Assembly (NCBI RefSeq): GCF_006345805.1
Contig: NW_021835957.1
Coordinates: 32,265-96,264 of the forward strand
Source: Octopus sinensis
Lineage: Eukaryota
Direction of reading: 5' to 3'
Length of the DNA: 64,000 nucleotides
Notes under the pieces: model-generated
The model's input: only the letters and a program-made list of their open reading frames with translations
Told to the model about the DNA's origin: nothing
Database searches by the model: none
Shown: in pieces, positions 7,713 through 38,450 of the stretch
How positions within the stretch are numbered: the stretch's first letter is position 1
How the letters are laid out: the number at the start of each line of letters is the position of its first letter
Position numbers and translations under genes: made by a program

Positions 7713-8721
7713 CTTCCCTTACAAACCCGAGCAACGCCGGGCGATACTGCTAGTCTACAATAAACAGAAAGTTCTCCCACCCTGAGTATTGACTCCCAGA
7801 TTTTTCCCCCTTGGAAATTCTTGAATCTTCTGGCAGCAACTTGAAGTGCGAAAACAAAAAAGTTTCCCTTGGGTTAGCATACCTACCACCAGCAGACATC
7901 GAAGATGGTTGACTAAATATTACCATATATAGTATTGTCACAAGAGTGGTTGTCACGGTGGTAGTCGTGGTAAGTTGATGTTCATGCACTAAATGAATTT
8001 TAACGTTTTTTGTTTTTTTCTGGCTACTTTTCTGGATCGAATATCACCAAATGTTGCTTGGTGGTGGTTGTTTGTTCACTTCGTTGGGTGTCACCAGTTG
8101 TTACGAGAGTGGTGTTTGGGCGTTTCGTCAAATGGGGCAATGGTAGCTGTTGAGTTGGTGAATGGAAATGTATTTTTCAGATTACTTGAAGAAGTAATTA
8201 ACACTCGCAAACAATTAACAGAAGATTTCATTACTGTATATTGTGTTTTCTGGTTGTTGTTGTTTTTTTTACAAATACTAACAATAATTACATACCGAGA
8301 GAGACACGCTGCTTGGGATTTACATGTTAACCAATATAGCAATTTGTGGTCGGCCCATCATAACTGGAAAATAATTGTGCTCCATTCGAGGAGACGAACA
8401 TTCCTGTCTACTATCTGCCAGGTGCCTTAATCAGCTGAATGTAGTAATGAGAATGGAGACGTCATGTGGCTACCTCAACATTCTGCGGTTACCACTTTTA
8501 TATAGGACACAATGAGAAAGTTCTAGAAAATCAAATCACGCCATGGCTTGACGTTGATTAGTTGCTTAATAGACCGATCACGTGAAACTACTGAGATTTG
8601 ATCGTGATGTCTGCTTGGCTACCTAGAGATTCGGTTTTGAATCACTGCTACAATATTGTTCTTTCCACACAACACTACTATATATATATATGGTCTATAT
8701 TGTCAAATATAGTAATGTTGT

Positions 8722-12120: not shown

Positions 12121-12224
12121 CCCCACGTACGGTCGTATTCCCTACAAGAGAGAGAAAATTCTGTGCTACTTTTGCATACAGTCTAGTGCAGTATCCATAG
12201 TCTCCACTGTGAAATGACTTGATC

Positions 12225-14150: not shown

Positions 14151-15247
14151 TCTCTTCACATATTATTATCATAATTGATAACACTGATTCAGCTCCATAC
14201 AACTTAGTTTTGTAGGCTTCTCATATAAGTTTAGCTCATCAATCACCTAAGCCTGATGAATGAAATTCATATGATGAGCCTACGAAACTAAGGTGCGTGG
14301 AGCCAAATAATACAATTTACAAAATAAAAATATATAGCTCAGTGATCAGCGCGTTGGGCTCACAATCATGAAGTAGTGAGTTTGATTCTCGGACTGGGCT
14401 GTGTTGTGTTCTTGAACACAACACTTTATTTCCTGTTGCTTCAGTTCATTCAGCTGTAGAAATGAGTGGCAACATCACTAAAGCCAAGCGGTATCAGCTT
14501 TTGCCTTTCCATTAGATGACACAGGTGGTATGGAGAGGGGAGGCTTCTATGCATGGGTGATTGCTGTTCTTCCATAAACAACCTTACCAGGACTTGTGCA
14601 TTGGAGGGGAACTTTCTAGGTGTATCCCATGGTCATTCATGGCAGAATTATTACTGTGCCAGGTAAAATCCTTAGCAGTATTTCTTTCATCTGTCTTTAC
14701 ATTCTGAGTTCAACTTTGCTTTTCATCCTTTCAGAGTCAATAAAATTAGTTAGCAATTGAGCACAAGAGTTCTTGTCCTCTGAAGTTGCTGGCCTTGTGC
14801 CAAAATTTTGAAACCAATACATGTAAGCCCAACCAAATGTGTTGAGTGCCACTTTTGTTTGACCACTCAGTTATATATGTGTATATATATATATGTTTAT
14901 GAATTTATTTAGCAAGATTCCTGATGTGGGATGGAAGAGTCACTGAAGAGGTCACAGGTGTGTGACAAAAAATTTCCAGAGAGTGGGAAAAAAATATGAA
15001 CAATAATAAATGAGTGAAGAACAAATATATAGTGCATAGGTTTATTTGGCAAGAATATAAAAAATGGTCATTCCGAAATACAATAATATATATATAGATA
15101 CACATCTGAGAATGTAAAGATAAATAAAGACTACAAATGTTTCATAGCTAAACTCTTTTTATCATATATCTTCACCTTTTGTCATCTGTACTAGCTGTAT
15201 ATATGCTCGAAGTTTATTATCTTCATACATAGACTAGTGTATGTATA

Positions 15248-16039
15248 TACGTAGTCTGATCAATAAGTATCTAGACGGTTGCCATAGTAATGAATCTAAA
15301 ACAGAGTGAAACCACTTGGCACTGATTGACCTTGAACTCTGCTGCACATGTGCACCAAGTTTTAACATTCTAGCTCACTTCCCCTGTTTACAGCAGTGCT
15401 TGGAAGGAACATGTGTAGCATGTGATCATCGTATTGACCAGGACAGAAAAAGCTGAGCAGAGAATCTGCATTAAATTTTGACATAAGCTTGGTGATACCT
15501 GCTCAGAGGCTTATGCAAAATTTTCAAAACATGTTCATTGTTCTCGCCACAGTCAAGGAGATCTTGTGCAACTGAAACCTGAGTATCTTTTCGGACTGAA
15601 CTGAACCATAACTAATCTGTACATCCTCTGATAACTCACAAATGATTTGATGATTTCCCCTCACAGCTGTGATGTTTTCCACATTTCTGCTGGTTGCAAG
15701 TGTCCCAGAACATTCGTCAATACCAACATTTTTTCGGCCATCTTGGAAACATCTGAACCACTTGTACACTTGTGTGTGGCTCATACACTGCTCTCCATAC
15801 ACTTTCTGCAACTTTGTGTAGGCCTTTGAGCAGGTATCGCCATGGTCAATGTGACGATCACACGCTACACATTTTCCTTCCAAGCACTGCTGTAAACAAC
15901 AGAAGTGAGCTAGAATGTTAAAACCTAGTGTGCATACACAGCAGAGTTCAAGGTCAATCTTTGCCAAGCAGCTTCACTCCGAATGCTTTAGCTTTGTTAT
16001 TATGGCAACAGTCTAGATACTTATTGACCAGATCTCATA
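15248..16039. mobile_element. Non-autonomous mariner/Tc1 derivative with ~200-bp-plus inverted arms
   Basis: TA-flanked ends TACGTAGTCTGATCAATAAGTATC / GATACTTATTGACCAGATCTCATA. Transposase N-terminal HTH remnants: EQRICIKF.HKLGDTCSEAY on the plus strand and GDTCSKAYTKLQKVYGEQCMSHTQVYKWFRCFQDGR on the minus strand. Confidence 0.85.
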
Positions 16040-22450: not shown

Positions 22451-22559
22451 CTACCTTTTGCTATTACTGTGTCCCATTCCCCTAATGGGCATTTTGAAAT
22501 TGGCAGCAGCCTGATACTGGAGTTGATATGCTAATGGGTGAATCTTGAAACCATATAAT
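22451..22559 (-). CDS. CSNK2B: CK2 beta last coding exon ([36 protein letters not shown])
   Basis: tattttcag|A TTA TAT GGT TTC AAG ATT CAC, containing the conserved RLYGFKIH motif. TAG at 22451-22453. Confidence 0.96.
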
Positions 22560-22760
22560 CTGAAAATATATATGAATACGAGATAAGATAATCAGATGAA
22601 TACAGACTGCTATCAGCAGATTCAACGGTTTAAAAAAACCCCCAAAACGCAAAACATAAATTACTTCAAGAACAGTCTTGTAACATTCTTTAAACTCTCA
22701 TACAAAGAATTCAAAGTATTTTAAAAAACATATACCATCAGTTACTTCTCAAGAACACCT

Positions 22761-22887
22761 TCATTCTATTTCCATAGTTGTTTGTTCCTTCTTGAGCCAT
22801 AACTGGCTCATAAGGGCCGCTTTCCTGGTTTCATTGGTGTATAGGTTCCCCACCTGGACAGGACATTGGACCGTCGCAGGTGAGCAG
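22761..22887 (-). CDS. CSNK2B: Candidate alternative C-terminal exon of CK2 beta (S-CSPATVQCPVQVGNLYTNETRKAALMSQLWLKKEQTTMEIE*)
   Basis: Strong polypyrimidine acceptor tttctcgctctttcctcctgcctctag. The frame is open for 41 codons in the phase left by exon 6, the patch is GC-rich within an AT-rich intron, and donor-like sites lie at 22746 and 22736. No transcript evidence. Confidence 0.45.
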
Positions 22888-23852
22888 CTAGAGGCAGGAG
22901 GAAAGAGCGAGAAATTCTACCACTTCCTTGAATTTCTAGTGTTAAAGAAGCTGGATAATGTAAGCAAAACTGAAGATTTATTTCTTTTTTCAAGAAACTG
23001 AACCAAATCATTGCTGTGATTAAAGTTGAAGTGGTAGAATTTCTAACTTGAATTAACCTGGAGATTTGAAACTTCTAAGGAGATATTGGCCAGAAGAACT
23101 GTGCTTTAAAGCTATTTGCACTACTTCCTTGTTTATTTCACTCCAAGTCATATATAACAGCAAGAATGAATTACAAAATGAAGAGAATTAAGAGCATTTT
23201 TGCAATAAATAAAGGCATTTAATAACAAAATAATGTAGTCAGAGAAATAATATCATGTCATGATATTTGAAAAAAAAAAAAAAAAAAATTTCAATAACTA
23301 ATGTTTTACTATTTTCCAGTACTATCTGTAATTAGAGTAGTCTGAGACAAAAATTCCATAATAGATATATGCAAAAACTTAGTTGTGTTCCAAATATCAC
23401 TTTTATATATTTTGATAAATGAAAAAATTTGTTTTATGAAAGCAGTCCATATTTAATTTAAGCACATAGAAATATAGTAATGAAAAGGTTTAACTCCCTT
23501 CCATACCACTTCTGGGTCTTTGATACACAACATCTAAAATGTTTAGATTTCGAAATAAACTTTCCATCTTAATATGCTAGAACCTTTTGTTAAATCATTT
23601 TCCTAACACTAGCTTTGCAATGAACCAATTGTTTCAGCAAATCCTAAATTCTCAATTGTTTTTGAAATAAACAAACACACAAGCTGTGTATTCCATTAGA
23701 AATATGGCCACAACATGTTGAAGTCCCTGTGAACTAGTAACATGTCTTAAGCTCAAGTAACTGGTTGTTTCTTACACAAAAACTATTCATATACTTCTGA
23801 TGACAGTAAGGATTGCAATTACATTGAATTTATATTTTTTATGTATGTATAG

Positions 23853-24222
23853 GCACAGGTGTGGTAAGGAGCTTGCTTCCCAACAACATGGTTCTGGGTC
23901 AGTCCCACTGCTTGGCACCATGGACAAGTGTCATTTACTCTAATCTTGGGTTGTTGTTAGATGGAAACTGAAAGAAGCCTGTCGTATATGTGTGTGTGTA
24001 TATACATATATATACACACACACACACATGCATGTGTTTGTTCTCCACAATAGCTTGACAACCGATGTTGGTGTGTTTACGTGTTTGTAACTTAACAGTT
24101 TGACAGAAGGGACCGATAGAATAAGTATTAGGCTCATAAAGAGTATGTCCTACGGTCAATTTATTCAACTAGGAGGCAGTGGCTCCTGCATGGCCGCAGT
24201 CAAATAACTGAAACAAATGAAA
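23853..24222 (+). mobile_element. Same SINE family in CSNK2B intron 6
   Basis: Head and tail match the other copies. Confidence 0.8.
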
Positions 24223-24331
24223 GAGAGAGAGTGTGTGTGTGTATGTATGTATATATATATATATTATACACACCACACACACAAATTCCTACTCTCAGAT
24301 TATTGCTGGTGAAAAGCAATCAGCACTCTAC

Positions 24332-24520
24332 CTTGGAATAAATTGGTTTGCAGGACGCTTAGGTCTGTATTCAGGATGGACCATGAACAACATGTGTGGG
24401 AAACCAGTGCCGAAATATGCTCCATCCGTGTGGTGATGACGAGAAGACTTAGGTGTGTAAACATCTTGGCATTTTGGACAGTACAGCTTTACCATGGCTT
24501 CACCAGGTACATCATGAGAC
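24332..24520 (-). CDS. CSNK2B: CK2 beta exon 6 ([64 protein letters not shown])
   Basis: tttaacag|GT...CCAAG|gtagag. It is 189 nt against the expected 190; one base is missing near the start (GTCTCATGAT, probably GT CTC AGT GAT). Confidence 0.96.
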
Positions 24521-27107
24521 CTGTTAAATATACAAGGGGAATAACTTGAATAGTTGCAGTTATCAGAACAAAACAATAACAACAAAATATATCTGCTTAG
24601 AAGGAAAAAATAAAACCCACAAGAATTAGAAAATATTAACCCTTTTTTCTTTTAAGGCTCACTATCAGCATTACAATACTGATATTTTTAAAGACAACTC
24701 TGTAAAGTCACACACTGGTTTTCAGCAACATGTTTGACAAAGTAAAATTTAAACTGACAATTTTATGAATAAACCAGTCAAAGACATTCCTACATTTAAT
24801 ACAACCACTAAACCCTTCAAATAAACTCCATGTGCCCTCAGTACAAGGTTTTCACTATGCATACAGGTTAACACATAAAACGATCCAGTTTCACTTAGCT
24901 GCTTCATTAAGCAAGTCAGCCTGCCAGTGGCCACTAGACAATGAATTATATCTCTTAGCCAGTCCCTCAGCAACATGACATGACAGCTAAGCAGTAAACA
25001 CTCAGTTAAAAAATAACTAACATAGTCATAGTTAATCTGACCATCCAAATTCAATGTTAAGAAATTTTTAATAGATTCACTTCCAATTTGTCTGAAACTA
25101 CCTTCTTTCATTAATACATAAAAGGGACAGCGAATTGTTTGAGCAGTCATTTTTATATAACTATCACCTTCATTTTAACTTGAGTGTGTACACATGAAAC
25201 AGAGCTCCTGCTGGGCTAAACCTATAATCCATTTGAAAAGTAGCTATTTTATTTACATTACTCATGAGCTGAGGAAAGGCATGAACATTTCAAGTTACCA
25301 TTTCATGTTTTTGAAAATCGATCAGATTAATTAGAAAATATACTGAATACAAATGTATTAGGATATGCACAATATGAATCCTTGCAAATTAGTTTTTCTA
25401 ATCAACGGGGGTTTTTTTTTTTTTTTTTTTTCTCAGAAGCTTAGTCAGAGAGGGAAATGTCAATGACCATTTTCGAAGCTCCCACTTCCAAGTGCTAAGT
25501 GATGTTGATAAACTGACGATGGACTGGTATTAGCTTCTAGGTAATTTTTTAAAGTTTAATTCTATAGCTGTCTATATTCTTATAAAGATAGAGGTTTATA
25601 ATTATTCTATACTAGTTTAGATGCTGAATTAGAATTTCAATGCATTTGTTTCTGCAGTAAAGCAAGTTTTCTAAAGCTACATATCATATAATAATTATGT
25701 TCCAAACATAAAACAAAGAATATAAATTTTAAAAATTGAGTTTAAGGAATGCATAAATCTATTTGCAAGTGTAGAAACCATTATCCTATATTTAGAATAA
25801 ATGTTTATATCATTAATTATAGTTGCATAGCTACAAATTGAGGGGAAAGAATAGTCAAATCAACCCCAGTAGTTAACAGGTGCATGTTTAAATCAACAGC
25901 AGCAGCAAGATTGTATAAGGATGGGACTAAATTCTGCAAGATTCATTTTGAAGGAATGTTATTGATGATAATAGAAATAAATTGAACTATTGCTTTTGAT
26001 TCACCCTGGATTAAAATGCACTTCGTTTCATGCTTGAAACCAAATTTTCCAGAGACTTTAGCATGAGAAATTATTAATCATTCTTCACATACCTACACAT
26101 TTCTATGGGCTGATGCAGCAAGAGTGGCCCAGGATCTTGCTAGCATGTAAAATTAAGAAGAGATTTCCCCAAGGGCTAAATCAACAGTAATAGCAATATG
26201 TCTAAAGTACATTTTGGATAATGTTTACCATAAGAAAGTAATATACTTTTACTAGTTTCAGTCATTTGACTACTTCAACTCACTTAAGGTCTAGAGTGAC
26301 TCACAGCTATGGTAGAAAACAACCTGCCTAGCATGCCTTGTAGAAAATGAATATGGAAGGCGATGTGAACTTTTTATCCAGTTGGTCAGTGTTTTGATTA
26401 AGTAGACCTATAGTCAGAGGCATTCAACCATGATCATACCAATGGCTTAAAGATATGTAGGACTTCATTATCCAATGTGTTCTTTTCTTTTCTAAGACAG
26501 TAAAGTGTAATTTTAGAGAAATTTGGCTGCTATATGCAGCAAATCAAACAATCATATAGGAGACCTCTCTGTTGAAACTGGTAGTACAAACAGGTCCATT
26601 CTATAAATGCATTTTTACAATTCTGTTGTCAATTTTTACTTAAGATATTTCCAACAGCATTTATTAACATTTGATAAAAAAAGTTTTTTTCAAATATTCA
26701 CAAAAATTGAAGCAGTAAGCAGTAAGAAGTATTTGCTAATTTTTTGCATGCCCTAAATGAACTAAAGATTTAATTAAGATGTAAGAGTGGAGACAGTTAG
26801 TACCATAGTTGGGATTTATTGGGTGTAGAAAACAGGAATAAACCACAGAACTTAAAATGATGGTTTAGTAAGCAGAAATAAAATACAGCAATCATGTAGC
26901 CAAACCAAGCTAACAAACCCATTACAACTACCTAACCATACTAAAATGGATGCAGCTGTATTCTTAGATATTCACTCCCAAAGCTAGATGAAGTTTTACT
27001 AACTGATGAAAAGATAATTAGGTTGATTGAGACAGAATATCTTCAAAATTTAGACCCATAGTTAATTCTGATAAAAATTCATATTCAAACAACAGGAGAT
27101 GATCATT

Positions 27108-27328
27108 TTAACCCATTAGCATTCAGATTACTCTGTCAAATGCAACACTTATCCATTGACATGTTTGGAATTAATCATGCATTATCTCATAGCTCAGATT
27201 TCGATATGATTATTTAGTTTCAGAACAACATCGAAGGTAGATGTGAGAGGCTGGATCTGTTTGGTTTGAACATAAAACAGGTAGAATATTTAAGCCAGAC
27301 ATAGCTGGTTTAAATGCTAATGAGTTAA
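27108..27328. mobile_element. piggyBac-like MITE (TTAA|CCC.TTAGCATT...AATGCTAA.G.G|TTAA); copies at 50763-50980, ~33401-33810 (interrupted by an RTE tail) and ~18500-18630 (partial)
   Basis: TTAA target sites, short TIRs and a shared ~220-bp body. Confidence 0.75.
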
Positions 27329-27501
27329 AGAAACTGTTAATATTAACATTCCATTCCCAACCCTCTTTAAACGATCTCAAAGGGAATTAAATGTGTGTGA
27401 ATACGACTACACACTAGTTGGAAGCCTTAAGCTAAATCTGAAAATGTATTTTAAATAGAACAGCAATGAAAATAAAAAAGCTGGTTAACGGCTAAGCTTA
27501 C

Positions 27502-27617
27502 CATTTGAGCTATGCCCCTATTTGTCATTATGTAACGTGCATGGATCAAACCATACAGCATCTCAGCAGCTTGCTCAATCAAATCACTTTGGTTTGGATT
27601 ATCTTCAAGTTCATCAT
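27502..27617 (-). CDS. CSNK2B: CK2 beta canonical exon 4b ([39 protein letters not shown])
   Basis: 116 nt, phase 1 to 0, tatacag|...ATG|gtaagc. Also in the ORF track (27451..27636). Confidence 0.97.
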
Positions 27618-29121
27618 CTGTATAAAGATAAATCATTTACAGCCATCAACTCTCGCCCAACCAATTCCGATCAACAAACCCTGCAGAAACAATTACTGCG
27701 CACGGTGTGTGTGTGTGTGTCTGCGTATGTGTAATAAAAAATAAAACAGCAAAAAAAGAAAAAGGAATTTTGGAAACGGATGCAAACTTGCAAAATTCAT
27801 ATTTAAAAATAAATAAAAAAATAAACACCACTACAAAAATTATAACCAGAAATTGCGGAGGAGAGGAAAAACACACAACTCCTTTAATCATATCTAAATT
27901 CTCTAGATAAAAAAAGCCATGCCTCTAATGGCAATAAAATATATTGAATTGCAGTATATGACATTCAAGATTCTCAGGACTAAGTAATTGTCATGATTTT
28001 TCTAATCAGTTGATTAGTTATTAGTTAGTTCATGTATTATCCATACTTCTTATATCTAGTTACTAAATCTACATCATCATAATCATTTTAACACCCTCCC
28101 TCTCTTTTCCATGCGTGCATGGAGTTTGAGGCAGGTGTTCTATAGCAGGACGGTCTGTTTGCCACTAATTCTCACCCATTTCCAAGCAAGACATGTTTTC
28201 ACAGAATGACACTGCTTACATGATGGTGACATTCATTTACAACCACCACACAATGTCAAGACAAGGACACATGTAATCACATTTCGAATCAATCATTCAC
28301 TGTGGTCCTGTACTTTTGGTTTTCGTTTGCTTTCTTCCACAGTACGTAAATTTCCTAACTAAAGTTGGTCTGTTATCAAGATTGAAAAAAACCTTCAGTT
28401 GTTGCATCTTCAGTGCCTACATACAACAACACATATACATATATATACAATGGGTTTCCTTCAGTTTCCATCAACCAAATCCACTGATAAGGCTTCGGTT
28501 GGCTCAGAACACTTGCCTAAAGTGCCATGCAATGGGACTGAATTCATAACCATGTGGTTGGGAAGCAAGTATTTAAAACTCAAATGGCTTTAAGATCTTG
28601 CAATTGGTCAGTTAATCAAACATCTTCAATTTTCTCAGACTATTAGAATCCTTTTGCTAAAGAAAATACATGTGTCATAGAAAATGCCACTTCCTTAAAA
28701 TATGTATTTATCTGCTACATAATTCTGCAATATCCTAACTGCCAACTGTTGAAGCACCTATCACCTGCATCAATTTCATACATCTTGATTAATGGTTCTA
28801 ACTAATCATAAGCTAGAGGCAAACCCTTCATCTCAGATGCAATGCAATAAATTATATAAATATGAGACACTAAAACATATTCTATTTCAGTCTAAAGACA
28901 GCAGTAAAATTTAGCTGTCCTAAATATTATCTTCAGATTTTCCCCCTCTCCTTCCATGAAACAATTATAAAGTCAGACAGAAAAACAAACACACTTGAAG
29001 GCAGTTCAAATTGAGAATGTCATATTATGCAAGGTGTGAGACAAGAACAACAAATTTCTTTTGAAAACAAAATGAACATTCCATCAGACAGGGTCATGGC
29101 AGGAAGCAGACAAATTCTTAC

Positions 29122-29235
29122 CATAGTACTGAGACCAGCATTTGTTTAGGATATATCTAGCATGAATCAGTCCATAAAGCATGTCAGCAGCCTGCTCCAG
29201 CTGGTCTTTATTAACGCAGTCATCCCCATCATCGT
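29122..29235 (-). CDS. CSNK2B: CK2 beta duplicated exon 4a ([38 protein letters not shown] with one extra A removed); candidate mutually exclusive exon
   Basis: Acceptor ttttcttgtgttag and donor ATG|gtaaga. The core EQAA(D)[11 protein letters not shown] is homologous to exon 4b. It is 114 nt as assembled and 113 nt if the CTAAACA run is corrected. Confidence 0.8.
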
Positions 29236-31562
29236 CTAACACAAGAAAACAGATCTTCACAGTGAAGAAGCTTGGACAGATACAATGTGATAATAGAGTT
29301 TACACAAGCTATTAACAGCCAGCAGTCACACTTAAATTAGAACATATACAATCACAATACAATTTCAGTAAAAATTAGTTCTGAAAACTATCACATTTTC
29401 ATTTGCTTTGCAATTAAGAACATGACAGTCATAGAAAACTTACCTATTTCTTTTGGTTAGTACATTCGTGTTAGTGAAGGAGTATACACTGCCTAAATTT
29501 GTGAAGGTAGCAACTACTCTATTCTCTCTCTTACTTTTTCCTGAATGTCTTTTTTTTTTCTAAACAAGGAAGCTCATGTGCCCTGATTAGAAGCGAGTTC
29601 TGATGTTATGAACAGGACTCTTGGTCCTTTTTAACATTAAGATGACTGTATGGAGGTGCAAATAAATTCTAAACTATGGACAAAGCACGTTTGTCCATCC
29701 ATATATGTATACTGCGACACTAAAACGAAGTTACCTCCCTTCTATACTATAACTTCACAAACACATGGAAATATATTTAAAACATCTCAACTATATTTTC
29801 ATGTTCTTTCCCGAATGCAAAGCGACATATTTCTCATGAAAATGGACTGCATTTGAAACTAATGTAAAAGCTTTGTGCATTATCACATCCAAGATCTGCT
29901 GTGCTGAAGTGAATTAGGAATGCAACAATCTCTGCTAATTTCTTATGCAAGCTCAAAGTGCAAATATTACAACAGTTTATCTGTGAGAGAAATGCTGACT
30001 GATGTCACAAGAAAGCCATCACAACAAAGGAATACAATGTGCAAACCACTGTAAACTTATCTCCTAAACATAAAATATTTAATGATTGACATTTACAGAG
30101 ACATCAAATTTATTAGATTAATACTAGTAAGGAACTGTTTTGATCTCACCAAAAGCTACTGGTTTTACTAATAACCAGTCAACTGTAATGATATATTTTT
30201 ATACAACAGGAATAAATGCTGGCATGGCTATATGGTTAAGAAGTAAACTACATTTTACTGTTCATTCCCATTGTGTGGGTACTGTCAGTGTTTTCTACAG
30301 ACATGGGTTGATCAAGCATTGTGAGTGAAGTTGGTAGATGGAAACAGTGAGAAACCCATTCCATATACATGTGTACTTGTGAGTGTGTCTTCCCCTGTCT
30401 TAACAGGTATACACTAATTGAAAAAAAAGTCATCATTCATATAGCATCATTTGTTTACAATATATCCAAGTAAACATGCCAAGCCATTGAGTTGTTCAAT
30501 GTTGAAGTAAGATGGGGAAAATGTTACTTTCCTCAAAAACAGAAGAGTGCTGGTAATAGGAAGAGCATTTGGCCACAGAAAATCTACCTCAAACAAGTTA
30601 CATCTGCCCCATGCAAGTATAGAAAAGTGGAGGTTAACACGATATTGAAAATTGCATCTCTCCTGCAGCTGATGCTTTTGATATTTTAAATCTAATTAGC
30701 AACTAATTTCTCTGATTTAGAGAAACCTCATTATACTTGCTTAAAGTTCAAACTGAATAACCAGATGAATTTTTATCTCCAGTTATAATATTTCTATATT
30801 TCTGTTTTTTTTTGCAATGTCTCATGGTCAAAAGTATTCCATGATATTGAATGGTCTTAATGCAATAAGCGCTTGTATATACTAGTCACCACATTCAGAG
30901 TCTGCAGTTAAAGAGTTCAGATCAAACTTTGATCAGATTGATCTGATACCTATCCTCAGCTGTAGGCTTAAGCTGTGTCACAACAAAGTAAAAGGGTTTT
31001 GATACAAAACACAACAAAAATAAGTAACATTTTAAAAGATTTTGTTAAAGCAGAGCAAGGTAGCACCCATGAAATTTTTGCAGGGTTTCCAAAACTGGCA
31101 AAGAAAGCACCCACGTGTTATCTTCAGATTGGAGACCTTAACTGAATGTTTACAACATAGTAGATGAAAAGGTAATAAAGGGGTGAAACGGAGATGAATT
31201 AGTTCTATTGAATTTCACTGACAAGGCTTGGAACGACTCAAGGCTATGAAAGAAGCCACTTGTCCAATGTACTGTGCAGGGGGATTGAACTGGGAACTTC
31301 TTAACCATAAAGTCATTCATATCCCCAAGTGCACCTAGTTGAATATCTTGATCATTTTGTCATATCATCATCATCATTTAGTGTCTGCTTCCATGCTGGC
31401 ATGGACTGGACAGTTCGACTTAAACTAGTAAGCCGGAGAGCTGCACTAAGTTCCAGTCTGGTTGGATGCCCTTCTGACACCAACCATTCTAAGAGTATAA
31501 AGGATGTGTCTCACAAAAAAAAAAAATTTAAGAATCAAAACAAAAGCCAATAGATTGAGTAC

Positions 31563-31665
31563 CTGGCTCAAGGTCTAATATCATATCCAGAGCCTGCCTA
31601 TAATGAGGGACTTGTTCATTGAGACCTGTTAAGTTGAATTTGTCTTGAATATAATCTTCATCAAC
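31563..31665 (-). CDS. CSNK2B: CK2 beta exon 3 ([34 protein letters not shown])
   Basis: 103 nt with cag|...G|gtactc boundaries. The translation matches the conserved CK2 beta sequence. Confidence 0.97.
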
Positions 31666-34600
31666 CTGCAATAAATAAATAAAAGATTAATTACACAAAT
31701 TACATGCTAAGAAAGTAAATAGCAAAGGTATGTATCATAGTAATAGCACTAATTGTAGAAATGTACACTGACTCTTTCAGCGATAACTGAATGTATGCTA
31801 GCAAATAGTTATTAATAGAATTAGTAGAACAGAGAACACCAAAGTACTGCTACTACAATAAGATTATTGATATTGGTATTTAACCCCAGGTCAACCCTAA
31901 GTAAGAAGGGAAATAAGTGGTCGAATTCATTCAAGCTACAGCCATATTCTTTTCAAGCTGTGTATTTAAAATCACACAAACCAATGTATCCGTTTTTAAG
32001 ATGGTAGATACAAATTGAAAGAGATTTGACTGCTATTTCTCACAAATATATCAATTACATAAAAAGTCCTAACACCTAACTTCACAGTAAAATATACAGT
32101 CTTGTTTCTATATATTAACAATAACCTACACAACATTGGTATCCTATGAATTGTGTCAGTCATGTGTTTGTTTTTTTTAATTATCATTGTTTTAATGTCC
32201 ACTTTTCCATGCTTGCACTAAATTTGTGAAGGCAGATTTTTCTATGGCCAGATGCCCTTCCTGCCGCCAACACTCACCTGTCTCGAAGATATTATTTCTC
32301 CAAGACCAGACATGTTTTCATGAAAAATTGGAAACAAAGGACACTGCATGCATAATAGCAATACTCGTTACAGCTATCATATGAAATCTAGGCAAGAAGA
32401 CAGTAAACACACTGTGAATGTGTGTGTGTGTATATATATATATATATCATCGTTTAACGTCCGTTTCCAATGCTAGCATAGGTTTGACTGGAGGTCTGGG
32501 AAACCCGGAAGCTGCACCAGGCTCCAGTATGATTTGGTAGTGTTTTCTACAGCTGGATAAACTTCCTAACGCCAACCATTAAGAGTGTAGTGGGTGCTTT
32601 TTACATGCCACTAGTATCTACCACGTTTGGATGATATAAAATGGGCTTTTCCAGTTCTCATCTACTGACAAGGCTTTGGTTAGCCGGGGTTATAGAAGAC
32701 ACATGTAAAAGGTGCCACACAGAGACTGAATCTGAAACTTCTTACCTCACAGCTATGCTCATGCCTACGTTTTGTTACATTTATTGAAGGAGCCATTAAC
32801 AGTTTGGGGAGAAAAATGTGAGATGATGATGACTTGTTAACAATGAAACTGGTAGGCTTGATCCTCATTCCAAGCTGCCAAAAGTTCCCTATGGTCCTAA
32901 TTTTTAAAAATGGAGATTCAATGCAGATTGATCATGGTTAGAATGCCTTTTGATCATAGATCTAATCCATCAGAACAGACCAGGAGCAGAATAACATCAC
33001 TTAACAGCCAGTTTTCAACGAGTCAGACTGAATTTGTTGAAGCAAATTTTCTATGATCAGATACCCTTCCTGTTGCCAGTTCTCACCTGCTTCCACAGTT
33101 TCCATCAACCAAATTCAAGAACAAAGCATTGGTCAGCCCAAGACTTTGTAGAAGCTACTTGCCCAAGGTGTTGAACAGTAGAACTAAACCCAAAACCACA
33201 TAGCAATATATGCTTTTCATGGAAAAGATTCCCAGATCCTTGAGTAATTGCTTAGTGTTTCCAATTTATATTGGACCTTGGATTGTTATACAGCAAACTA
33301 TTTACATAACATGGCATCTAACAGAGCAAGATTTGAATTTTCTTTTTAAAGTTTGTCTATAAATCAGCTGTAAATTGCATAATTGTTGTTTTTTTGTTTC
33401 TTAACCCTTTAGCATTCAGATTTCTTTCTTCAATTTATAGCTTATTTATTCACATTGTTTTGAATTAATCAGGCAAAATCTTGTAGCTTCAAGATTTCTA
33501 TATGATTGTATATGCCAAAAATGACCCCGCCTGTGCTGGTGCCATGTAAAAAGCACTCAGTCCACTCTGTGGCGGGCGGGCTGTCTGGTGTTAGGAAGGA
33601 AGGAAGGGTATCCAGCCATAAAAACCATGCCAAAACAGACACTGAAGTCTGGTGCAGTCTTCTGCCTGGCAAGCTCTTGTCAAACCACCCAACCTATGCT
33701 GTTGAACCATGATGCTTGTAGGGGTGGTGTGAGAGGTTGGTTCTGGTCAGTTTAAACTTATAACAGGTAGAATATTTGGACCAGATATGGCTGATTTAAC
33801 TGCTAAAGGTATATATTATTGAAAAACCTGTTAGATTTATGCACAATAGTGTTGAGGATTCCACTCTTTCGATCATCATATTTCCAGACTGTGAGTGTCT
33901 TTCTCATTTCAGCCACTGGATTGTGTTCATGCTGGAGAGTACTTCTTTGAACAGTTCAATTAAAAAAATCATCCCCAGCACATATTTTTTTAAAGCCTGG
34001 TACTTATTCTATCAGTCTACATTGCTGAACTGCTAAGCTATGGGGATATAAACAAATCAACACCAGCTGTTAAGTGCTGTGTATGTGGGAAACAAGCAAA
34101 CACAGACACACAAAGTTTCTGCCTATCAAATTAATTCACAAGGCTTTGGTTGACTTGGGTTATCGATGAAGATACTCACTCGAGGTACCACGCAGTGGGA
34201 TTGAACCTAAAACCATGCCTGCTTGCATACTTTCTTTTCACACATTCCCAACGGCATGAAAGGAAAGCAAATATACTCATATTTGAAGACATTTTCACTA
34301 AAGGATAGACATATATAAAGAAAAGATTTATAAAGCACTGACATATTGATAATTTTTTTTCTTCTTTTAACTTGAATGCAAACAATGTCAAGAGTAGTGC
34401 TGGCTGCAAGTGACGGCGTTTAATAAAGAACAGTGAAGCACAATGAAAATGCTGAACAATGGATTTGCTGGACTATGGATACCAGATTAATGGAACTTTT
34501 CTGTATACAGGGCACAAACTTGGACACGTGACCAAGTTTGCTTTGTGACCATGTGGTTTGGGTTTAGTTCCATTGTGTAGCACCTTGGGCAAGTGGCTCC

Positions 34601-35227
34601 TACAAAGACCAGTGAGTGAGTGAATACGGTAGATGGAAACCATGTTATATATGTGTATGTGTGTGCCTCCCTGCCACTGCTGCTTCACAACCAGTGTTGG
34701 TTCATGCCTTCATAAAGTGGCTCGGCCTGAAACACCCCTGTACATAACTCCATGTCCCCCTACACGGTCTTGCTTTTTGCTTTTTTGAGCCAAAAAATTA
34801 ACTTAACCTAACTAATAAGTACTAGACCAATAAAAAAAAATATACAAAAAGTGGGTTTGATGTGTTCAACTAAAACCTTTTGATGCTGTGCCCCAGCGTG
34901 GCCACAGTCCAATGACTGAAATAAGAAAAAGCTATGTACATAAAAGGTGTTGAGTGAAACTGACAGCCAGTTCTTAAATTACACCAAGAGCGACCCAGAG
35001 TTCTATTATTAAACAGAGACCTGTACTAACATGACTATTTTAATGACCTCATTAATTGCTGTTGCTATTTACGTATTCATATTTGGAAGCCAATCCCAAT
35101 CCAGGTTGTTTGTTAATTTGGTATAGATTCTTTTAATTTCTATTGGTTTCAGTACTGCTTTTTCTCACATTGTTATTTATCATTCAGAATTCACAAGAGT
35201 TTTAAGTAAACATGTTATTTTTATCTT

Positions 35228-35445
35228 TTATTTTACTTGTTTCAGTCATTGGACTGCAGCCATGCTGGGGGCACTGCCTCGAAGAATTTTAGTCAAAGGA
35301 ATCAACCCCAGTACTTATTCTAACTTTTTGCTAAACTGCTAAGTTACAGGGATGTAAACAAACCAACAACAGTTGTCAGGTGATAGTAAATGCATAAAAC
35401 ACAGTTTCCTTCAACCGAGTTCACTCACAAGGCTTTGTACAGTCT
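35228..35445 (-). mobile_element. Diverged partial copy of the same SINE
   Basis: Tail TTGTTTCAGTCATTGGACTGCAGCCATGCTGG. Confidence 0.7.
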
Positions 35446-35497
35446 GAGACTATAGAAGATGCCCAAATGATATTAAAAAGGCAACATCCTTTTTTGG

Positions 35498-35669
35498 CGC
35501 AGGAGGGCTGTGTGGTAAGTAGCTTGTTTACCAACCACATGGTTCCGGGTTCAGTCCCACTGCATGGCATCTTGGGCAAGTGTCTTCTGCTATAGCCCCG
35601 GGCCAACCAATGCCTTGTGAGTGGATTTGGTAGACGGAAACTGAAAGAAGCCCGTCGTATATATGTATG

Positions 35670-35704
<35 letters not shown>

Positions 35705-35905
35705 ACGTACGTGTTTGTCCCCCTAGCATTGCTTGACAACCGATGCTGGCGTGTTTACGTCCCCGTCACTTAGCGGTTCGGCAAAAGAGACCGATAGAAT
35801 AAGTACTGGGCTTACAAAGAATAAGTCCCGGGGTCGATTTGCTCGTCTAAAGGTGGTGCTCCAGCATGGCCGCAGTCAAATGACAGAAACAAGTATAAGA
35901 GTATC
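35498..35905 (+). mobile_element. Young full-length copy of the same SINE in CSNK2B intron 2
   Basis: Near-identical (reverse complement) to 2606-3007. Confidence 0.88.
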
Positions 35906-36522
35906 TTAATTATTTTTCAGTTAGTTCTATAGCTATTTTTTTTTCTATTGTATTTTATAGAGCAATTATAAATAAATTTGACTAAACTCCCTTTTCCCCA
36001 CACATCATTTAATATTCTTTTCTACTCTAGCACAAAGCCAGAAATTTTTGGGGAGGGGGCCAGTTGATTAGATTGACCCCAGTACACAACTGGTACTTAA
36101 TTTATCAACTCCAAAAAGGATGAAAGGCAAAGTTGTTTGCTGTGAAATTTGAACTCAGAATAAAAGAAAGATGAAATACCATTAAGCATTTCACCCAGCG
36201 TACTAATGTTTCTGCCAACTCACCATCTTAATATTGATAAGTGAATGTATATTATACATGAAACCAGAGTATAACTCATCATACGTCAGGTAGCTTTGAG
36301 AGTGTACTTTCGCCACCAAGAGTAATAACAAGAATTATGTCATACACAATACAATAATTACAAATTAACTTTCATCAAATTTCTTGGTACTTATAATAAA
36401 ATAAATATTTAGTTTCAAAAGAAAAATATCTTAAATTCCAAATTTCTCGTTTGAATAACTTCTCCAACTACTGCCATTCACTTCCTCTCCTCCAGTCTGA
36501 TTCAATCTCTCTCACTATTGTG

Positions 36523-36556
<34 letters not shown>

Positions 36557-37496
36557 ACACACACACACATACATATAGATGACCGTTCTTTTACTCATTG
36601 CCTGCCACCAAACCTCTTATGCGCACATATCCTGCACCTTATAACTTACCTCTCTCTATCTTTTTTGCTCTCCTCGCTTTCTCTATGAGGGTGTAAAGCA
36701 TGACCGGAGAAATCAATCAACTATTATATCTGCTATTATTATATCAAACTCCTTACCACCAAAAGATTTCATTGCTCAAAGTTATGCCTGGGTCATCATC
36801 ATCATTTAACGTCCGTTTTCCATGCTAGCATGGGTTGGACGGTTTTGACTGAGGGCTGGCAACCAGATGGCTGCACCAGACTCCAGTCTTGATCTGGCAG
36901 AGTTTCTAACGCCAACCACTCCGAGAGTGTAGTGGGTGCTTTTCACGTGCCACCTGCACAGGGGCCAGTCAGGCGGTACTGGCAATGACCTCGCTCGAAT
37001 GGTGCCCTTTTACGTGCCAGTTGGTTGCTCTGGCAACGATCACGCTCGGATGGTGTTCTTGGCACCCTACTAGCACAGGCATAAGTGCCAAAGTACGATA
37101 CAAATGAAAAACTTCTCTTATTAGAAATTATTTCATCACAGGAATCTCTCGCCTTGCATATGTGTAAAAATGTTTTTTCTACCTTGTTTGGCACCAGGGC
37201 CAACCCTGAACAAGCAGACCTATAATCAAAAACATTATCACGAAAATCCTGGGTTTTTTTCTCGTGTTTAAAAAAAAAAATTAACAAGAAATGGCGGTGC
37301 CCCAGCATGGCCACAAGCTCATAAGCTGAAAATAGAATCAATCAATCAATCAAAACTACATTATCCAGTAAGTCATGTTTTAAAATGGGTGATTTAAAAG
37401 AATTACTAATGAGCACCCACAGAGATGCGCATAATTTTCTAAAATATTATTGTTAAACAAATTAACAAAGAATGACAATAGATCAGCTCTACTTAC

Positions 37497-37566
37497 TTCG
37501 CAAAAGAACTCATTTCCTCGCAATCCACAAAACAGGAAATCCAAGAGACTTCTCTGAACTACTCAT
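37497..37566 (-). CDS. CSNK2B: Casein kinase II subunit beta, first coding exon ([24 protein letters not shown] once two missing G residues are restored)
   Basis: Acceptor ttcag|GATCTGAT ATG (exon starts at 37574) and donor GAA|gtaagt. It is 70 nt against the expected 72: GAGAAG instead of GAGGAAG and TCCTGTTTTGT instead of TCCTGGTTTTGT. Confidence 0.93.
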
Positions 37567-38450
37567 ATCAGATCCTGAAGTGAAAAAAACGAAAAAAAGA
37601 GAAAAACTTTAGATAAGCAATTCATGTGAAACTCGTTTAAAATATGTAATTAAATTATTACCGAATATTTGCTTCCACATGAGAGCAATGATGGTTTTCT
37701 CAAAATGATCGATATAAGTTTCAACAAATAATCGGTTTGTACATAAAACAGTTTATGTAACAGGAGCAAAATGATACACTCGATTATATGATGGAGGGTA
37801 ACAAAATCTATTTTTACAAACACTGTCCTAAAAATGTTTTTTGTTAAAGCAATTCAAAGCAAATTTTGTCATCACCATGTGTGCATGATTCGATACTTAT
37901 GTTTAACAGCAAAAAAAAGATCAACCTAAAACCTCTGCTACACATCGTATTCAATAGCAGGAAGATATTAAACAATACACTTTATACGTCATAATAAAAT
38001 ATCATCAGATTAAAAAAGAATATTTTCACAATACACTGATCAGATCACTTGAAATTAATTACACATGAAGAAAAAAAAAAATTCTGAAATTCAACAGACG
38101 TTAATGTTTTACTCCCAGAATTCAGTTAGAATTAAGAGAAATGTTATGAAACACAACGTTACAAGCAACAGACATCAATTCTTCCTACTGGCAATTTAAG
38201 ATATAAAGTGAAATATTGGACAGAATAGTGATGATTCTATATTCTCTGAAATGTTTGGGTTGTAACGTCATCTTATCACTTCCATCTTATTTTAATCTTA
38301 ACTAGCAATAGCTCACATTTCAAATAAGATTGGTTAAACGAGATAAGTTCATAAACCCTGATAAAACATAACCTGCATATACAATGAATCCACAAGTAGA
38401 GAAGACATTTCAATGCCCAATTCCCTACTCGAGGGTTGTTTATACTGAAT

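What the first reader, a model, noticed from the sequence alone, without database searches (positions are those of the whole stretch)
27502..29235. Tandemly duplicated exon 4 in CK2 beta: candidate mutually exclusive splicing of the acidic regulatory loop
Seen in the sequence: between exon 3 and the canonical exon 4 is a second exon with good splice sites encoding [38 protein letters not shown] (after removing one extra A), against [39 protein letters not shown]. The helical core is conserved at protein level despite many synonymous differences, which is the pattern expected under purifying selection. The acidic-loop part is rewritten: one residue shorter, a new Cys, and Arg92 changed to Ala. 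Established: this region (human D55-D64) mediates polyamine binding, down-regulation of kinase activity and holoenzyme oligomerisation. Inference: both exons are phase 1 to 0, so including both shifts the frame, a classic way to enforce mutual exclusion. The animal could thus switch between two CK2 regulatory subunits from one gene. I do not know of an internal mutually exclusive exon in CK2 beta. The gene model track does not show it.
Basis: partly seen in the sequence, partly recalled or inferred. Interest (0 to 1): 0.85.

Follow-up and report, generated by a model that had tools for sequence, protein, structure and literature searches.

The report
Alternative exon 4 in octopus CK2 beta
The octopus gene for the regulatory (beta) subunit of protein kinase CK2 carries two conserved versions of exon 4 that look like an either/or splicing choice; one database gene model already uses the second version, and the stray extra base in this window is an assembly error.

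Summary
On the minus strand, canonical exon 4b lies at 27617..27502 (116 nt) and a homologous exon 4a at 29235..29122.

The "extra A" (29147-29145) is specific to this window. O. sinensis reference, O. bimaculoides, O. vulgaris, Argonauta hians and one Logan octopod contig all carry a 113-nt exon. The window differs from the O. sinensis reference almost only by small indels. It also has frameshifts in exons 2 and 6 and lacks exon 5.

RefSeq XP_036361111.1 (O. sinensis CK2 beta isoform X2) contains exactly the predicted 4a peptide in place of 4b. Both exons are 3n+2, phase 1 to 0. Including both, or neither, gives an early stop codon.

- 4a sits in a 360-nt block identical in three Octopus species.
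- 4a has no synonymous change against Argonauta (about 10.7 expected).
- 4a versus 4b gives pN/pS of about 0.27 at saturated pS.

Scallops also have an upstream 4a-like exon under purifying selection, and a Nucella gene model contains one. I found none in Lottia, Sinanodonta, an annelid or a hemichordate.

No RNA junction data could be examined and no paper describes this. Verdict: a real, conserved, probably mutually exclusive exon pair, and a new instance of a known mechanism.

The parts
29122..29235 (-). Exon 4a, the alternative copy of exon 4. It is 114 nt as assembled here and 113 nt in every other octopod sequence. It encodes (D)[37 protein letters not shown], phase 1 to 0, with ag/gt splice sites.
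   Evidence: The peptide is identical to residues 68-105 of RefSeq XP_036361111.1.
29145..29147 (-). AAA run holding the window-specific extra A. The O. sinensis reference, O. bimaculoides, O. vulgaris, Argonauta and Logan contig L092 all have AA.
29029..29389 (-). A 360-nt block (361 nt here, with the extra A) that is 100% identical in O. sinensis, O. bimaculoides and O. vulgaris. It is centred on exon 4a: 154 nt of upstream intron, the exon, and 93 nt of downstream intron. It is the longest perfect run between exon 3 and exon 5.
   Evidence: The next longest run is 128 nt, at 4b. Background identity is about 0.90-0.95.
27502..27617 (-). Exon 4b, the canonical exon 4. It is 116 nt, phase 1 to 0, and encodes (D)[38 protein letters not shown].
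   Evidence: The core peptide is 100% identical in octopods, scallops, Sinanodonta and Lottia.
31563..31665 (-). Exon 3 (103 nt), ending ...LDLEP plus the first base of a split codon. It is the upstream constitutive partner of 4a and 4b.
25552..25553 (-). Site where about 330 bp are missing from the window relative to all three Octopus assemblies (L001 14134-14461). The missing piece contains exon 5 ([25 protein letters not shown], 76 nt), the downstream constitutive partner.
   Evidence: exon 5 not found; deletion mapped.
37497..37574 (-). Exon 2, with the ATG at 37566. In the window it has two 1-nt deletions relative to the O. sinensis reference (GAG-GAA and TCCT-GTT), which break the frame of MSSSEEVSWISWFCGL.
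37662..37680 (-). Coding part of an alternative upstream first exon (ATGTGGAAGCAAATATTCG|gt). It gives the MWKQIFGSD- N-terminus of RefSeq isoforms X1 and X2.
24332..24520 (-). Exon 6 (190 nt in the reference). The window lacks one C near 24515, breaking GLTDVPGE.
22451..22559 (-). Coding part of exon 7, up to the TAG stop.

Best explanation
**What it is.** Exon 4 of the single CK2 beta gene was duplicated in tandem long ago. Both copies are maintained as a pair of alternative coding exons, of which a productive mRNA carries exactly one.

**How it works (inferred).**
- The spliceosome joins exon 3 to either 4a or 4b and then to exon 5.
- Each copy is 3n+2 and phase 1 to 0. An mRNA with both copies, or with neither, acquires a premature stop and is expected to be removed by nonsense-mediated decay.
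- Intron sequence next to both copies is conserved. It probably holds the binding sites that set the choice.

**The two products.**
- Both isoforms keep the buried and surface residues of helix alpha-D: Tyr80, Arg86 and Met97.
- The isoforms differ in residues 59-70 of the acidic loop, which is the pseudosubstrate, polyamine-binding and oligomerisation element.
- The isoforms also differ in four residues just after alpha-D. In 4a, Arg92 is lost, Ile94 becomes Leu or Met, Ala95 becomes Ser or Thr, and Gln96 becomes Thr, Ile or Val. These positions are nearly invariant in other animals.
- The animal can therefore make two regulatory subunits from one gene. They probably differ in autoinhibition, polycation response or partner docking.

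**The extra A.** In this window it is an assembly error.

**Shown:** the anatomy, the conservation, the frame logic, and the existence of an annotated 4a isoform.
**Inferred:** actual exclusivity in RNA, involvement of NMD, and any biochemical difference between the isoforms.
For: 1. RefSeq isoform X2 of O. sinensis carries 4a in place of 4b; X1 and X3 carry 4b.
2. 4a is intact, 113 nt, with ag/gt sites in O. sinensis, O. bimaculoides and O. vulgaris, where the peptide is identical. The same holds in Argonauta hians and in a more divergent octopod Logan contig, where the exon is 100% identical at nucleotide level while the flanking intron is 84-93% identical.
3. Frame logic: 113 and 116 nt. 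Double inclusion gives ...[17 protein letters not shown]; double skipping gives LEPD*.
4. 4a against 4b in Octopus gives pS 0.81 (saturated, equal to octopus 4b against scallop 4b) but pN 0.22, a ratio of 0.27. This indicates long-term protein-level constraint on 4a since an old duplication.
5. Hallmarks of regulated alternative exons:
   - a 360-nt perfect block around 4a in three species;
   - between Octopus and Argonauta only 4a and 4b have alignable intron flanks (309 and 423 nt blocks), whereas the exon 3 and exon 5 blocks are essentially the exon alone;
   - synonymous divergence is suppressed in both. 4a has 0 of 24.2 sites changed against 10.7 expected, P about 7e-7. 4b has 3 of 22, P about 0.002. 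Constitutive pS is 0.44.
6. Three scallop assemblies have an upstream 4a-like exon of the same phase. Lengths are 137 and 140 nt as computed, and about 131 nt inferred from the Pecten peptide; all are 3n+2 and differ only by in-frame indels. Core pN/pS is 0.1-0.19.
7. Arg92 and Ile94 are at least 90% conserved in 46 animal CK2 beta sequences yet are replaced in every 4a.
8. The window's extra A sits among other indel errors. Against the O. sinensis reference there are 13 mismatches against 104 gap columns in 13.1 kb, and 0 mismatches against 33 gap columns in 4.7 kb.
Against: - No RNA junction evidence could be examined. The only isoform evidence is one automatically predicted RefSeq model.
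- Annotations of O. bimaculoides, O. vulgaris, Argonauta and the scallops list only 4b isoforms.
- Eight hypothetical full-length 4a isoforms are absent from a 15-billion-protein collection. Usage may therefore be low or restricted.
- Between Octopus and Argonauta all 7 differences in 4a are nonsynonymous and none is synonymous. That pattern shows nucleotide-level rather than codon-aware constraint, and it is also compatible with a regulatory, non-coding role. If 7 substitutions fell at random, P(0 synonymous) is 0.19, so the pattern is uninformative either way.
- No selector/docking RNA pairing was found and there is no excess local folding. The only enforcement mechanism supported is the frame rule.
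Confidence: 0.75

Rival explanations
1. 4a acts mainly as a 'poison' cassette. It is included together with 4b, shifts the frame and sends the CK2 beta mRNA to nonsense-mediated decay, so it tunes the CK2 beta level rather than making a second protein. On this view the 4a-only RefSeq model is a minor or artefactual product.
For: - Including 4a upstream of 4b gives a stop 13 codons into 4b.
- Nucleotide conservation is extreme, with 360 nt identical in three species and the exon 100% identical in a fifth octopod. No synonymous change separates Octopus from Argonauta, while all 7 changes are nonsynonymous. This resembles ultraconserved poison exons.
- Most annotations lack a 4a protein isoform.
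Against: - A poison exon needs no open frame or protein similarity. Yet 4a keeps pN/pS of 0.27 against 4b at saturated pS.
- 4a keeps the structurally important residues Tyr80, Arg86 and Met97.
- 4a keeps exactly the phase and 3n+2 length that make substitution productive.
- The scallop 4a-like exons change length only in multiples of three and have pN/pS of 0.1-0.19.
- RefSeq X2 joins 4a directly to exon 5.
Confidence: 0.13
2. 4a is a decaying pseudo-exon, a relic of an old duplication that is no longer spliced. The frameshifting A seen in the window would then be real.
For: As assembled, the window's 4a is 114 nt and does not substitute in frame. Most gene models ignore the exon.
Against: - The extra A is absent from five other octopod sequences.
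- The window has the same kind of indel in constitutive exons 2 and 6 and lacks exon 5.
- 4a is more conserved than the surrounding intron, and more conserved at synonymous sites than the constitutive exons.
- The splice sites are conserved from Octopus to Argonauta.
Confidence: 0.02
3. The conserved 360-nt block is primarily something other than an exon, such as an intronic enhancer, a small RNA, or an RNA-editing or structural element. Its open frame would be a leftover, and RefSeq X2 an over-prediction.
For: Conservation extends well into the intron on both sides. The substitution pattern against Argonauta is not codon-aware.
Against: - There is no excess RNA folding (z = 0.78).
- Against Argonauta, conservation narrows to the exon plus about 50 nt upstream and about 140 nt downstream, and includes both splice sites.
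- Independent 4a-like exons with coding signatures exist in scallops.
- This reading does not explain retention of phase, length class and the CK2 beta helix residues.
Confidence: 0.1

Closest known systems
Mutually exclusive exon pairs derived from tandem exon duplication (for example SCN alpha-subunit exons 5a/5b, tropomyosin and PKM, and the 236 human events catalogued in PMC8373072)
   Same: Both involve two adjacent homologous exons of the same phase and similar length, one of which is used per mRNA. The pairs are ancient, with both copies under purifying selection and with conserved flanking intron. The substitution swaps a structural element without disturbing the fold.
   Different: The host gene is CK2 beta. 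It is not in the main text of that human catalogue or in any paper found here. So far the pair has been seen only in molluscs. Actual exclusivity in RNA was not measured here.
Frame- and NMD-enforced mutually exclusive splicing (one of the mechanisms described for C. elegans and mammalian mutually exclusive exons, e.g. PMC4165533)
   Same: Both exons are 3n+2, so double inclusion or double skipping creates a premature stop.
   Different: NMD sensitivity of the aberrant products is inferred, not shown. The regulators are unknown.
Docking-site/selector RNA-structure clusters of mutually exclusive exons (Dscam exon 6, 14-3-3 zeta, MRP1; PMC6071210)
   Same: Both arise from tandemly duplicated alternative exons with conserved intronic elements.
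   Different: No conserved complementary intronic pair was found between the 4a and 4b blocks, and there is no excess folding. The cluster has only two members.
Diversification of CK2 beta by gene duplication (yeast CKB1/CKB2, plant CKB1-4, Drosophila CK2 beta', SSL/Stellate and CK2 beta-tes; PMC3359341 for the fly testis genes, the rest from my own knowledge)
   Same: The outcome is the same: more than one regulatory subunit for the same catalytic subunit, often differing around the acidic region.
   Different: Here the diversity would come from one gene by splicing. It is confined to residues 59-97, and the rest of the protein is identical.
RefSeq XP_036361111.1, casein kinase II subunit beta isoform X2 [Octopus sinensis]
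   Same: It is the same isoform as the one proposed. The 4a peptide is identical residue for residue.
   Different: It is an automated prediction for one species, with no accompanying description. The window's own gene models reportedly lack it.

Membership tests
Mutually exclusive exon pair from tandem exon duplication | Two neighbouring exons in one intron-exon interval that are homologous to each other | tested here: met
   4a and 4b lie 1503 nt apart between exons 3 and 5. They are 71% identical in amino acids and 65% in nucleotides over the 28-codon core. 4a matches human CK2 beta with E = 1.8e-6 within the window.
Mutually exclusive exon pair from tandem exon duplication | Same phase and compatible length, so that either exon alone preserves the reading frame | tested here: met
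   The exons are 113 and 116 nt, both phase 1 to 0. 3+4a+5 and 3+4b+5 both translate through. In the window as assembled (114 nt) this fails, because of the erroneous A.
Mutually exclusive exon pair from tandem exon duplication | Mature mRNAs contain one and only one of the two exons | tested here: inconclusive
   RefSeq models X1 and X3 have 4b only and X2 has 4a only. No RNA-seq junction data could be examined. No other 4a isoform is in the protein collection.
Mutually exclusive exon pair from tandem exon duplication | Both copies conserved across species | tested here: met
   4a and 4b are present and intact in three Octopus species and Argonauta; 4a alone is seen in one further octopod contig. 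A 4a-like plus 4b pair is present in three scallop assemblies.
Frame/NMD-enforced exclusivity | Joint inclusion and joint skipping both create premature stop codons upstream of later exon junctions | tested here: met
   3+4a+4b+5 stops 13 codons into 4b. 3+5 stops after one codon. The same holds for Mizuhopecten 4b read in phase 0.
Frame/NMD-enforced exclusivity | Aberrant double-inclusion or double-skip transcripts accumulate when NMD is blocked | not testable with these tools
   This needs an experiment.
RNA-structure (docking/selector) clusters of mutually exclusive exons | Conserved intronic sequences complementary to each other next to the alternative exons | tested here: not met
   The best stems between the 4a and 4b blocks are at most 12 bp, rich in G-U pairs, and not kept in Argonauta. 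Folding z-scores are 0.78 and -0.01. One 11-bp stem bracketing 4b is kept 10/11 in Argonauta but is weak.
Poison (NMD) cassette exon | Inclusion of the exon always yields a non-productive mRNA, and there is no protein-level constraint on the exon | tested here: not met
   Substituting 4a for 4b is productive. 4a against 4b gives pN/pS of 0.27 at saturated pS. Scallop 4a-like exons have pN/pS of 0.1-0.19 and in-frame indels only.
CK2 regulatory subunit (Pfam PF01214, CK_II_beta) | Sequence membership of the family, including the four zinc-binding Cys | tested here: met
   PF01214 is precomputed for P0052 and its relatives. There is a 452-bit match to human CK2 beta chains 1jwh/4dgl. In the window itself exon 5, which carries Cys109 and Cys114, is missing because of an assembly deletion.

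The most novel reading that the evidence does not exclude
The 4a/4b pair is not an octopus peculiarity. It would be one ancient duplication, predating the split of cephalopods, gastropods and bivalves more than 500 million years ago, kept as a switchable module in one of the most conserved proteins known and lost in some lineages (Lottia, Sinanodonta).

The alternative module re-tunes the autoinhibitory acidic loop. In scallops the loop is hyper-acidic and 5-8 residues longer; in octopods and Nucella it is one residue shorter. In every lineage where that part of the exon could be read (octopods and scallops) the module also removes the near-invariant Arg92.

The result would be a second CK2 holoenzyme type with different self-inhibition, polyamine response or partner docking.
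Probability: 0.3. Interest if true: 0.65.

Novelty: new member of a known kind. Interest (0 to 1): 0.5.

Why it matters
CK2 beta is among the most conserved animal proteins. Exon 4b encodes an identical 39-residue peptide in octopus, scallop and the freshwater mussel Sinanodonta, and an identical 28-residue core in limpet. In most animals CK2 beta is a single gene with no known internal isoforms.

Exon 4 encodes most of the acidic loop. That loop acts as pseudosubstrate, polyamine site and oligomerisation contact (PMC9608649). A natural either/or version of this exon would be a ready-made experiment on how the loop and the neighbouring Arg92 surface regulate CK2. It would also show that some animals diversify CK2 regulation by splicing rather than by gene duplication.

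For genome annotation there are two practical lessons:
- The exon is missed by most mollusc gene models, and in Nucella it is wrongly fused into one.
- This particular assembly carries frequent single-base indels and a deletion that removes a constitutive exon.

Tried and rejected
1. **Word-indexed protein search with the 43-aa 4a peptide.** It returned 50 short genomic ORFs carrying a canonical-type (4b-like) exon 4 from other organisms. It missed even the exact RefSeq hit, so it says nothing about absence.
2. **Profile search with an octopod plus scallop 4a alignment.** The only 4a-type hit was a genomic ORF of the L008 scallop (P0327). No spliced 4a transcripts turned up.
3. **Exact look-up of eight hypothetical full-length 4a isoforms.** None is in the collection.
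4. **Scan of JGI/ENA metagenome contigs with the full protein.** It returned 80 loci, mostly transcript-like, all with a canonical-type (4b-like) exon 4 and no tandem pair.
5. **Exhaustive HMMER search of 1.84 billion representatives with the first 30 residues of 4a.** It gave one further octopod genomic ORF (P0420, locus L092) and no 4a outside octopods.
6. **Search for competing RNA structures between conserved intron blocks and folding z-scores.** Nothing convincing was found.
7. **Test of whether octopod and scallop 4a are orthologous.** They are only 54-57% identical to each other, and each is closer to 4b. The same positions are substituted more often than chance predicts (6 shared of 8 and 11, P = 0.02), but only one derived residue is identical. 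Orthology is unresolved.
8. **AlphaFold2 model of isoform X2.** Mean pLDDT was 48.9, too poor for conclusions. It was used only to place residues 92-96 at the start of the helix after alpha-D.
9. **Exon 5 in the window.** I first suspected it was merely disguised by frameshifts. It is in fact deleted from this assembly.
10. **Weak CK2 beta-like tblastn matches at 12223-12170 and 14509-14471.** Their order is not colinear with the protein, so I treated them as chance.
Full report
**The observation**

The window carries a CK2 beta (casein kinase II regulatory subunit) gene on the minus strand. tblastn with human CSNK2B finds exon 2 near 37.5 kb, exon 3 near 31.6 kb, exon 6 near 24.4 kb and exon 7 near 22.5 kb. 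It finds two matches to residues 56-98: a strong one at 27.6 kb and a weaker one at 29.2 kb (E = 1.8e-6).

Reading the sequence gives these exons:
- Exon 4b is ag|ATGATGAA...CAAATG|gtaagc at 27617..27502, 116 nt.
- Exon 4a is ag|ACGATGAT...ACTATG|gtaaga at 29235..29122, 114 nt as assembled.

As assembled, 4a leaves the CK2 beta frame after ...HARYIL. Deleting one A of the AAA run at 29147-29145 restores ...TNAGLSTM. The finding's coordinates run from the end of 4b to the start of 4a.

**The assembly is error-prone, and the extra A is one of its errors**

- In exon 2 the expected MSSSEEVSWISWFCGL is split over three frames.
- Exon 6 starts out of frame.
- Exon 5 could not be found anywhere in the gene.

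I fetched the same locus from three assemblies: the O. sinensis reference (L001, GCA_006345805.1), O. bimaculoides (L002) and O. vulgaris (L003). The window is O. sinensis-like.
- Over 13.1 kb it differs from L001 by 13 mismatches but 104 gap columns.
- Over a further 4.7 kb it differs by 0 mismatches and 33 gap columns.
- Identity to O. vulgaris is 97.5%.

The reference has intact frames where the window does not:
- two 1-nt deletions in exon 2;
- one extra A in 4a;
- one missing C in exon 6;
- a deletion of about 330 bp (L001 14134-14461, window about 25553) that removes exon 5.

The extra A is absent from L001, L002, L003, Argonauta (L004) and a Logan contig of a further octopod (L092). The true length of 4a is 113 nt.

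**An isoform with 4a is already annotated**

I searched with a hypothetical full-length 4a isoform. The search returned RefSeq XP_036361111.1, 'casein kinase II subunit beta isoform X2 [Octopus sinensis]', at 99% identity. Its sequence reads ...[53 protein letters not shown].... That is exon 3, then 4a, then exon 5, without 4b.

Isoforms X1 and X3 of the same gene carry 4b. So do all listed isoforms of O. bimaculoides, O. vulgaris and Argonauta.

From general knowledge, NCBI's Gnomon normally creates extra isoforms only where transcript alignments support them. I could not inspect the evidence for this model.

**Frame logic**

With the reference coordinates, exon 3 is 103 nt, 4a is 113 nt, 4b is 116 nt and exon 5 is 76 nt. 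Intron 3-4a is 2331 nt, intron 4a-4b is 1503 nt and intron 4b-5 is 2065 nt.
- 3+4b+5 and 3+4a+5 read through.
- 3+4a+4b+5 gives ...[17 protein letters not shown].
- 3+5 gives LEPD*.

**Conservation in octopods**

The 4a peptide is identical in the three Octopus species. The exon sits in a 360-nt run of perfect three-species identity (L001 10304-10663, window 29389-29029). This is the longest such run between exons 3 and 5. The next is 128 nt at 4b, and background identity is about 0.90-0.95.

In the more divergent octopod contig L092 the 113 nt are again 100% identical, while the neighbouring intron is 84-93% identical.

Argonauta hians has 4a with the same splice sites and length. It encodes [38 protein letters not shown].

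Between Octopus and Argonauta the only alignable sequence from exon 3 to exon 5 is the four exons. Exons 3 and 5 align essentially as bare exons (124 and 94 nt). 4a and 4b align with their intron flanks (309 and 423 nt). Conserved flanks are a known hallmark of regulated alternative exons.

Nei-Gojobori counts for Octopus against Argonauta:

| Exon set | pS | pN | Note |
|---|---|---|---|
| Constitutive exons | 0.36-0.49 (pooled 0.44, exons 2, 3, 5-7) | 0.007 (pooled with 4b) | |
| 4b | 0.136 (3 of 22 sites) | 0 | P about 0.002 |
| 4a | 0 (0 of 24.2 sites) | 0.078 (7 changes) | 10.7 synonymous changes expected, P about 7e-7 |

Five of the seven changes in 4a lie in the first ten codons.

Both alternative exons therefore have suppressed synonymous change. 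In octopods 4a is constrained at the nucleotide level, and its loop-coding 5' end changes at the protein level. On its own this does not prove coding constraint, because seven random substitutions would miss synonymous sites with P = 0.19.

The comparison of 4a with 4b does show coding constraint. pS is 0.81, as saturated as octopus 4b against scallop 4b. pN is only 0.22, a ratio of 0.27. The duplication is therefore old, and the 4a protein sequence has been kept.

**Beyond octopods**

A Nucella lapillus (gastropod) gene model, KAL8561188.1, contains [25 protein letters not shown] followed by junk and then a full 4b. This shows a 4a-like exon upstream of 4b that the predictor fused into one protein. 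Its locus was not retrievable.

Three scallop loci each have, upstream of a canonical 4b, an ag/gt-bounded exon of the same phase.

| Locus | Assembly or species | 4a-like exon length | Encoded peptide |
|---|---|---|---|
| L007 | Mizuhopecten yessoensis | 137 nt | [46 protein letters not shown] |
| L008 | third pectinid assembly | 140 nt | [47 protein letters not shown] |
| L009 | GCA_902652985.1 (Pecten maximus, by my reading of the accession) | about 131 nt, inferred from the peptide | [44 protein letters not shown] |

All three lengths are 3n+2 and differ only by in-frame indels. Core pN/pS is 0.1-0.19. The exon lies in a block alignable between genera.

I found no second copy in any of these:
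- Lottia, where the gene is only 2.3 kb;
- Sinanodonta;
- the annelid Dimorphilus or the hemichordate Ptychodera;
- 80 metagenome or metatranscriptome loci.

Whether octopod and scallop 4a share one origin is unresolved. They are 54-57% identical to each other, against 71% and 61% to 4b. They are substituted at overlapping positions (6 shared, P = 0.02). They share position, phase and the loss of Arg92.

**What changes in the protein**

Exon 4 encodes human residues 59-97. This covers most of the acidic loop (Asp55-Asp70) and helix alpha-D.

According to PMC9608649:
- Mutating residues 55-57 to Ala hyperactivates CK2.
- In holoenzyme crystals the loop contacts the basic substrate site of a neighbouring alpha subunit.
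- Tyr80 and Met97 are buried.
- Arg86 belongs to a conserved surface cluster.

All 4a variants keep Tyr80, Arg86 and Met97.

Octopod 4a keeps an acidic run (DDDGDD). It loses Pro66, gains a Lys and is one residue shorter. Net charge is about -5 against -6.

Scallop 4a is 5-8 residues longer and far more acidic, at about -9 to -10.

Every 4a replaces Arg92 (with A, V, P or Q), Ile94 (L or M), Ala95 (S or T) and Gln96 (T, I or V). Arg92 and Ile94 are at least 90% conserved in 46 animal CK2 beta sequences.

A low-confidence AlphaFold2 model (mean pLDDT 48.9; 60-80 in this domain) places these residues at the start of the helix following alpha-D. Any functional consequence is inference.

**Mechanism of choice**

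The intron between 4a and 4b is 1.5 kb and both exons use GT-AG splice sites. Steric exclusion and incompatible spliceosomes are therefore unlikely.

I looked for conserved complementary elements between the conserved blocks and found none that survive in Argonauta. The blocks do not fold better than shuffled controls (z = 0.78 and -0.01).

The best-supported mechanism is therefore the frame rule with NMD, plus protein factors binding the conserved flanks. All of that is inferred.

**Novelty**

Full-text searches found no paper describing a mutually exclusive or duplicated internal exon in CK2 beta/CSNK2B. CSNK2B does not appear in the main text of the human tandem-exon-duplication catalogue.

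The isoform does exist as a RefSeq prediction. The mechanism (tandem exon duplication, exclusive use, frame enforcement) is well known.

I therefore class the finding as a new member of a known kind. Its possible extension is an old molluscan pair, which my data suggest but do not prove.

**Verdict**

- The extra A is an assembly error.

Confidence in the mutually exclusive coding-exon explanation is 0.75. The main rival is a poison cassette used together with 4b, at 0.13.

Noticed in passing
window 22451-37680 (whole CK2 beta gene): The window's assembly differs from the O. sinensis reference almost only by small indels: 137 gap columns against 13 mismatches in 17.8 kb. The indels break constitutive exons 2 (two 1-nt deletions) and 6 (one 1-nt deletion). 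Any frameshift seen elsewhere in this window should be distrusted.
   Followed up: yes
window about 25552-25553: About 330 bp present in O. sinensis, O. bimaculoides and O. vulgaris are missing here. The missing piece includes constitutive exon 5, which carries zinc-finger Cys109 and Cys114. As assembled, the gene cannot encode CK2 beta.
   Followed up: yes
L007 5716-5852; L008 4697-4836; L009 about 2011-2141: Three scallop assemblies (Mizuhopecten yessoensis and two further pectinids, one of them GCA_902652985.1) carry an unannotated 4a-like exon upstream of canonical exon 4. It encodes a much longer, hyper-acidic loop and lacks Arg92. It is under purifying selection (pN/pS 0.1-0.19). The RefSeq scallop proteins list only the canonical form.
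   Followed up: partly
protein P0054 (Nucella lapillus KAL8561188.1): This gene model fuses part of a 4a-like exon ([25 protein letters not shown]), some intron-derived residues and the full exon 4b into one 256-aa protein. It is probably a mis-prediction, but it reveals a duplicated exon in a gastropod.
   Followed up: partly
window 27640-27650 and 27484-27494 (L001 12041-12051 / 12197-12207): An 11-bp complementary pair brackets exon 4b (GTTGATGGCTG / TAGCCGTTAAC). It is kept at 10 of 11 positions in Argonauta, but with many G-U pairs. It could loop out 4b. This is a weak, untested lead.
   Followed up: no
window 37662-37680: A short alternative first coding exon (MWKQIF-) lies about 90 nt upstream of exon 2. 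It gives the N-terminal extension of RefSeq isoforms X1 and X2.
   Followed up: partly
window 3171-7713: A 4.5-kb G+A-rich minisatellite with a 23-nt unit (CAGAGATCAAAGAGGGGTGCCGA), about 200 copies, 83-85% matches. It produces long spurious ORFs and the strong GC and AT skew at 4-8 kb.
   Followed up: no
window 15524-15967 (-): A 147-aa ORF whose sequence (…HTQVYKWFRCFQDGRKNVGIDECSG…) looks like the N-terminal DNA-binding part of a mariner-type transposase. It is probably a transposon remnant. This is judged by eye only.
   Followed up: no
window 12170-12223 and 14471-14509 (-): Two weak tblastn matches to CK2 beta residues 98-115 and 117-129 (IKSFHSGDYGYCTRLYAK; ERQKLIPLGFSDV). Their order is not colinear with the protein, so they are probably chance.
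   Followed up: no
L092 (Logan SRR11869391 contig, 1681 nt): A contig from an unidentified octopod, more divergent from O. sinensis than O. bimaculoides is in the upstream intron (84% identity). It carries exon 4a 100% identical at nucleotide level. The species and the type of library are unknown.
   Followed up: partly
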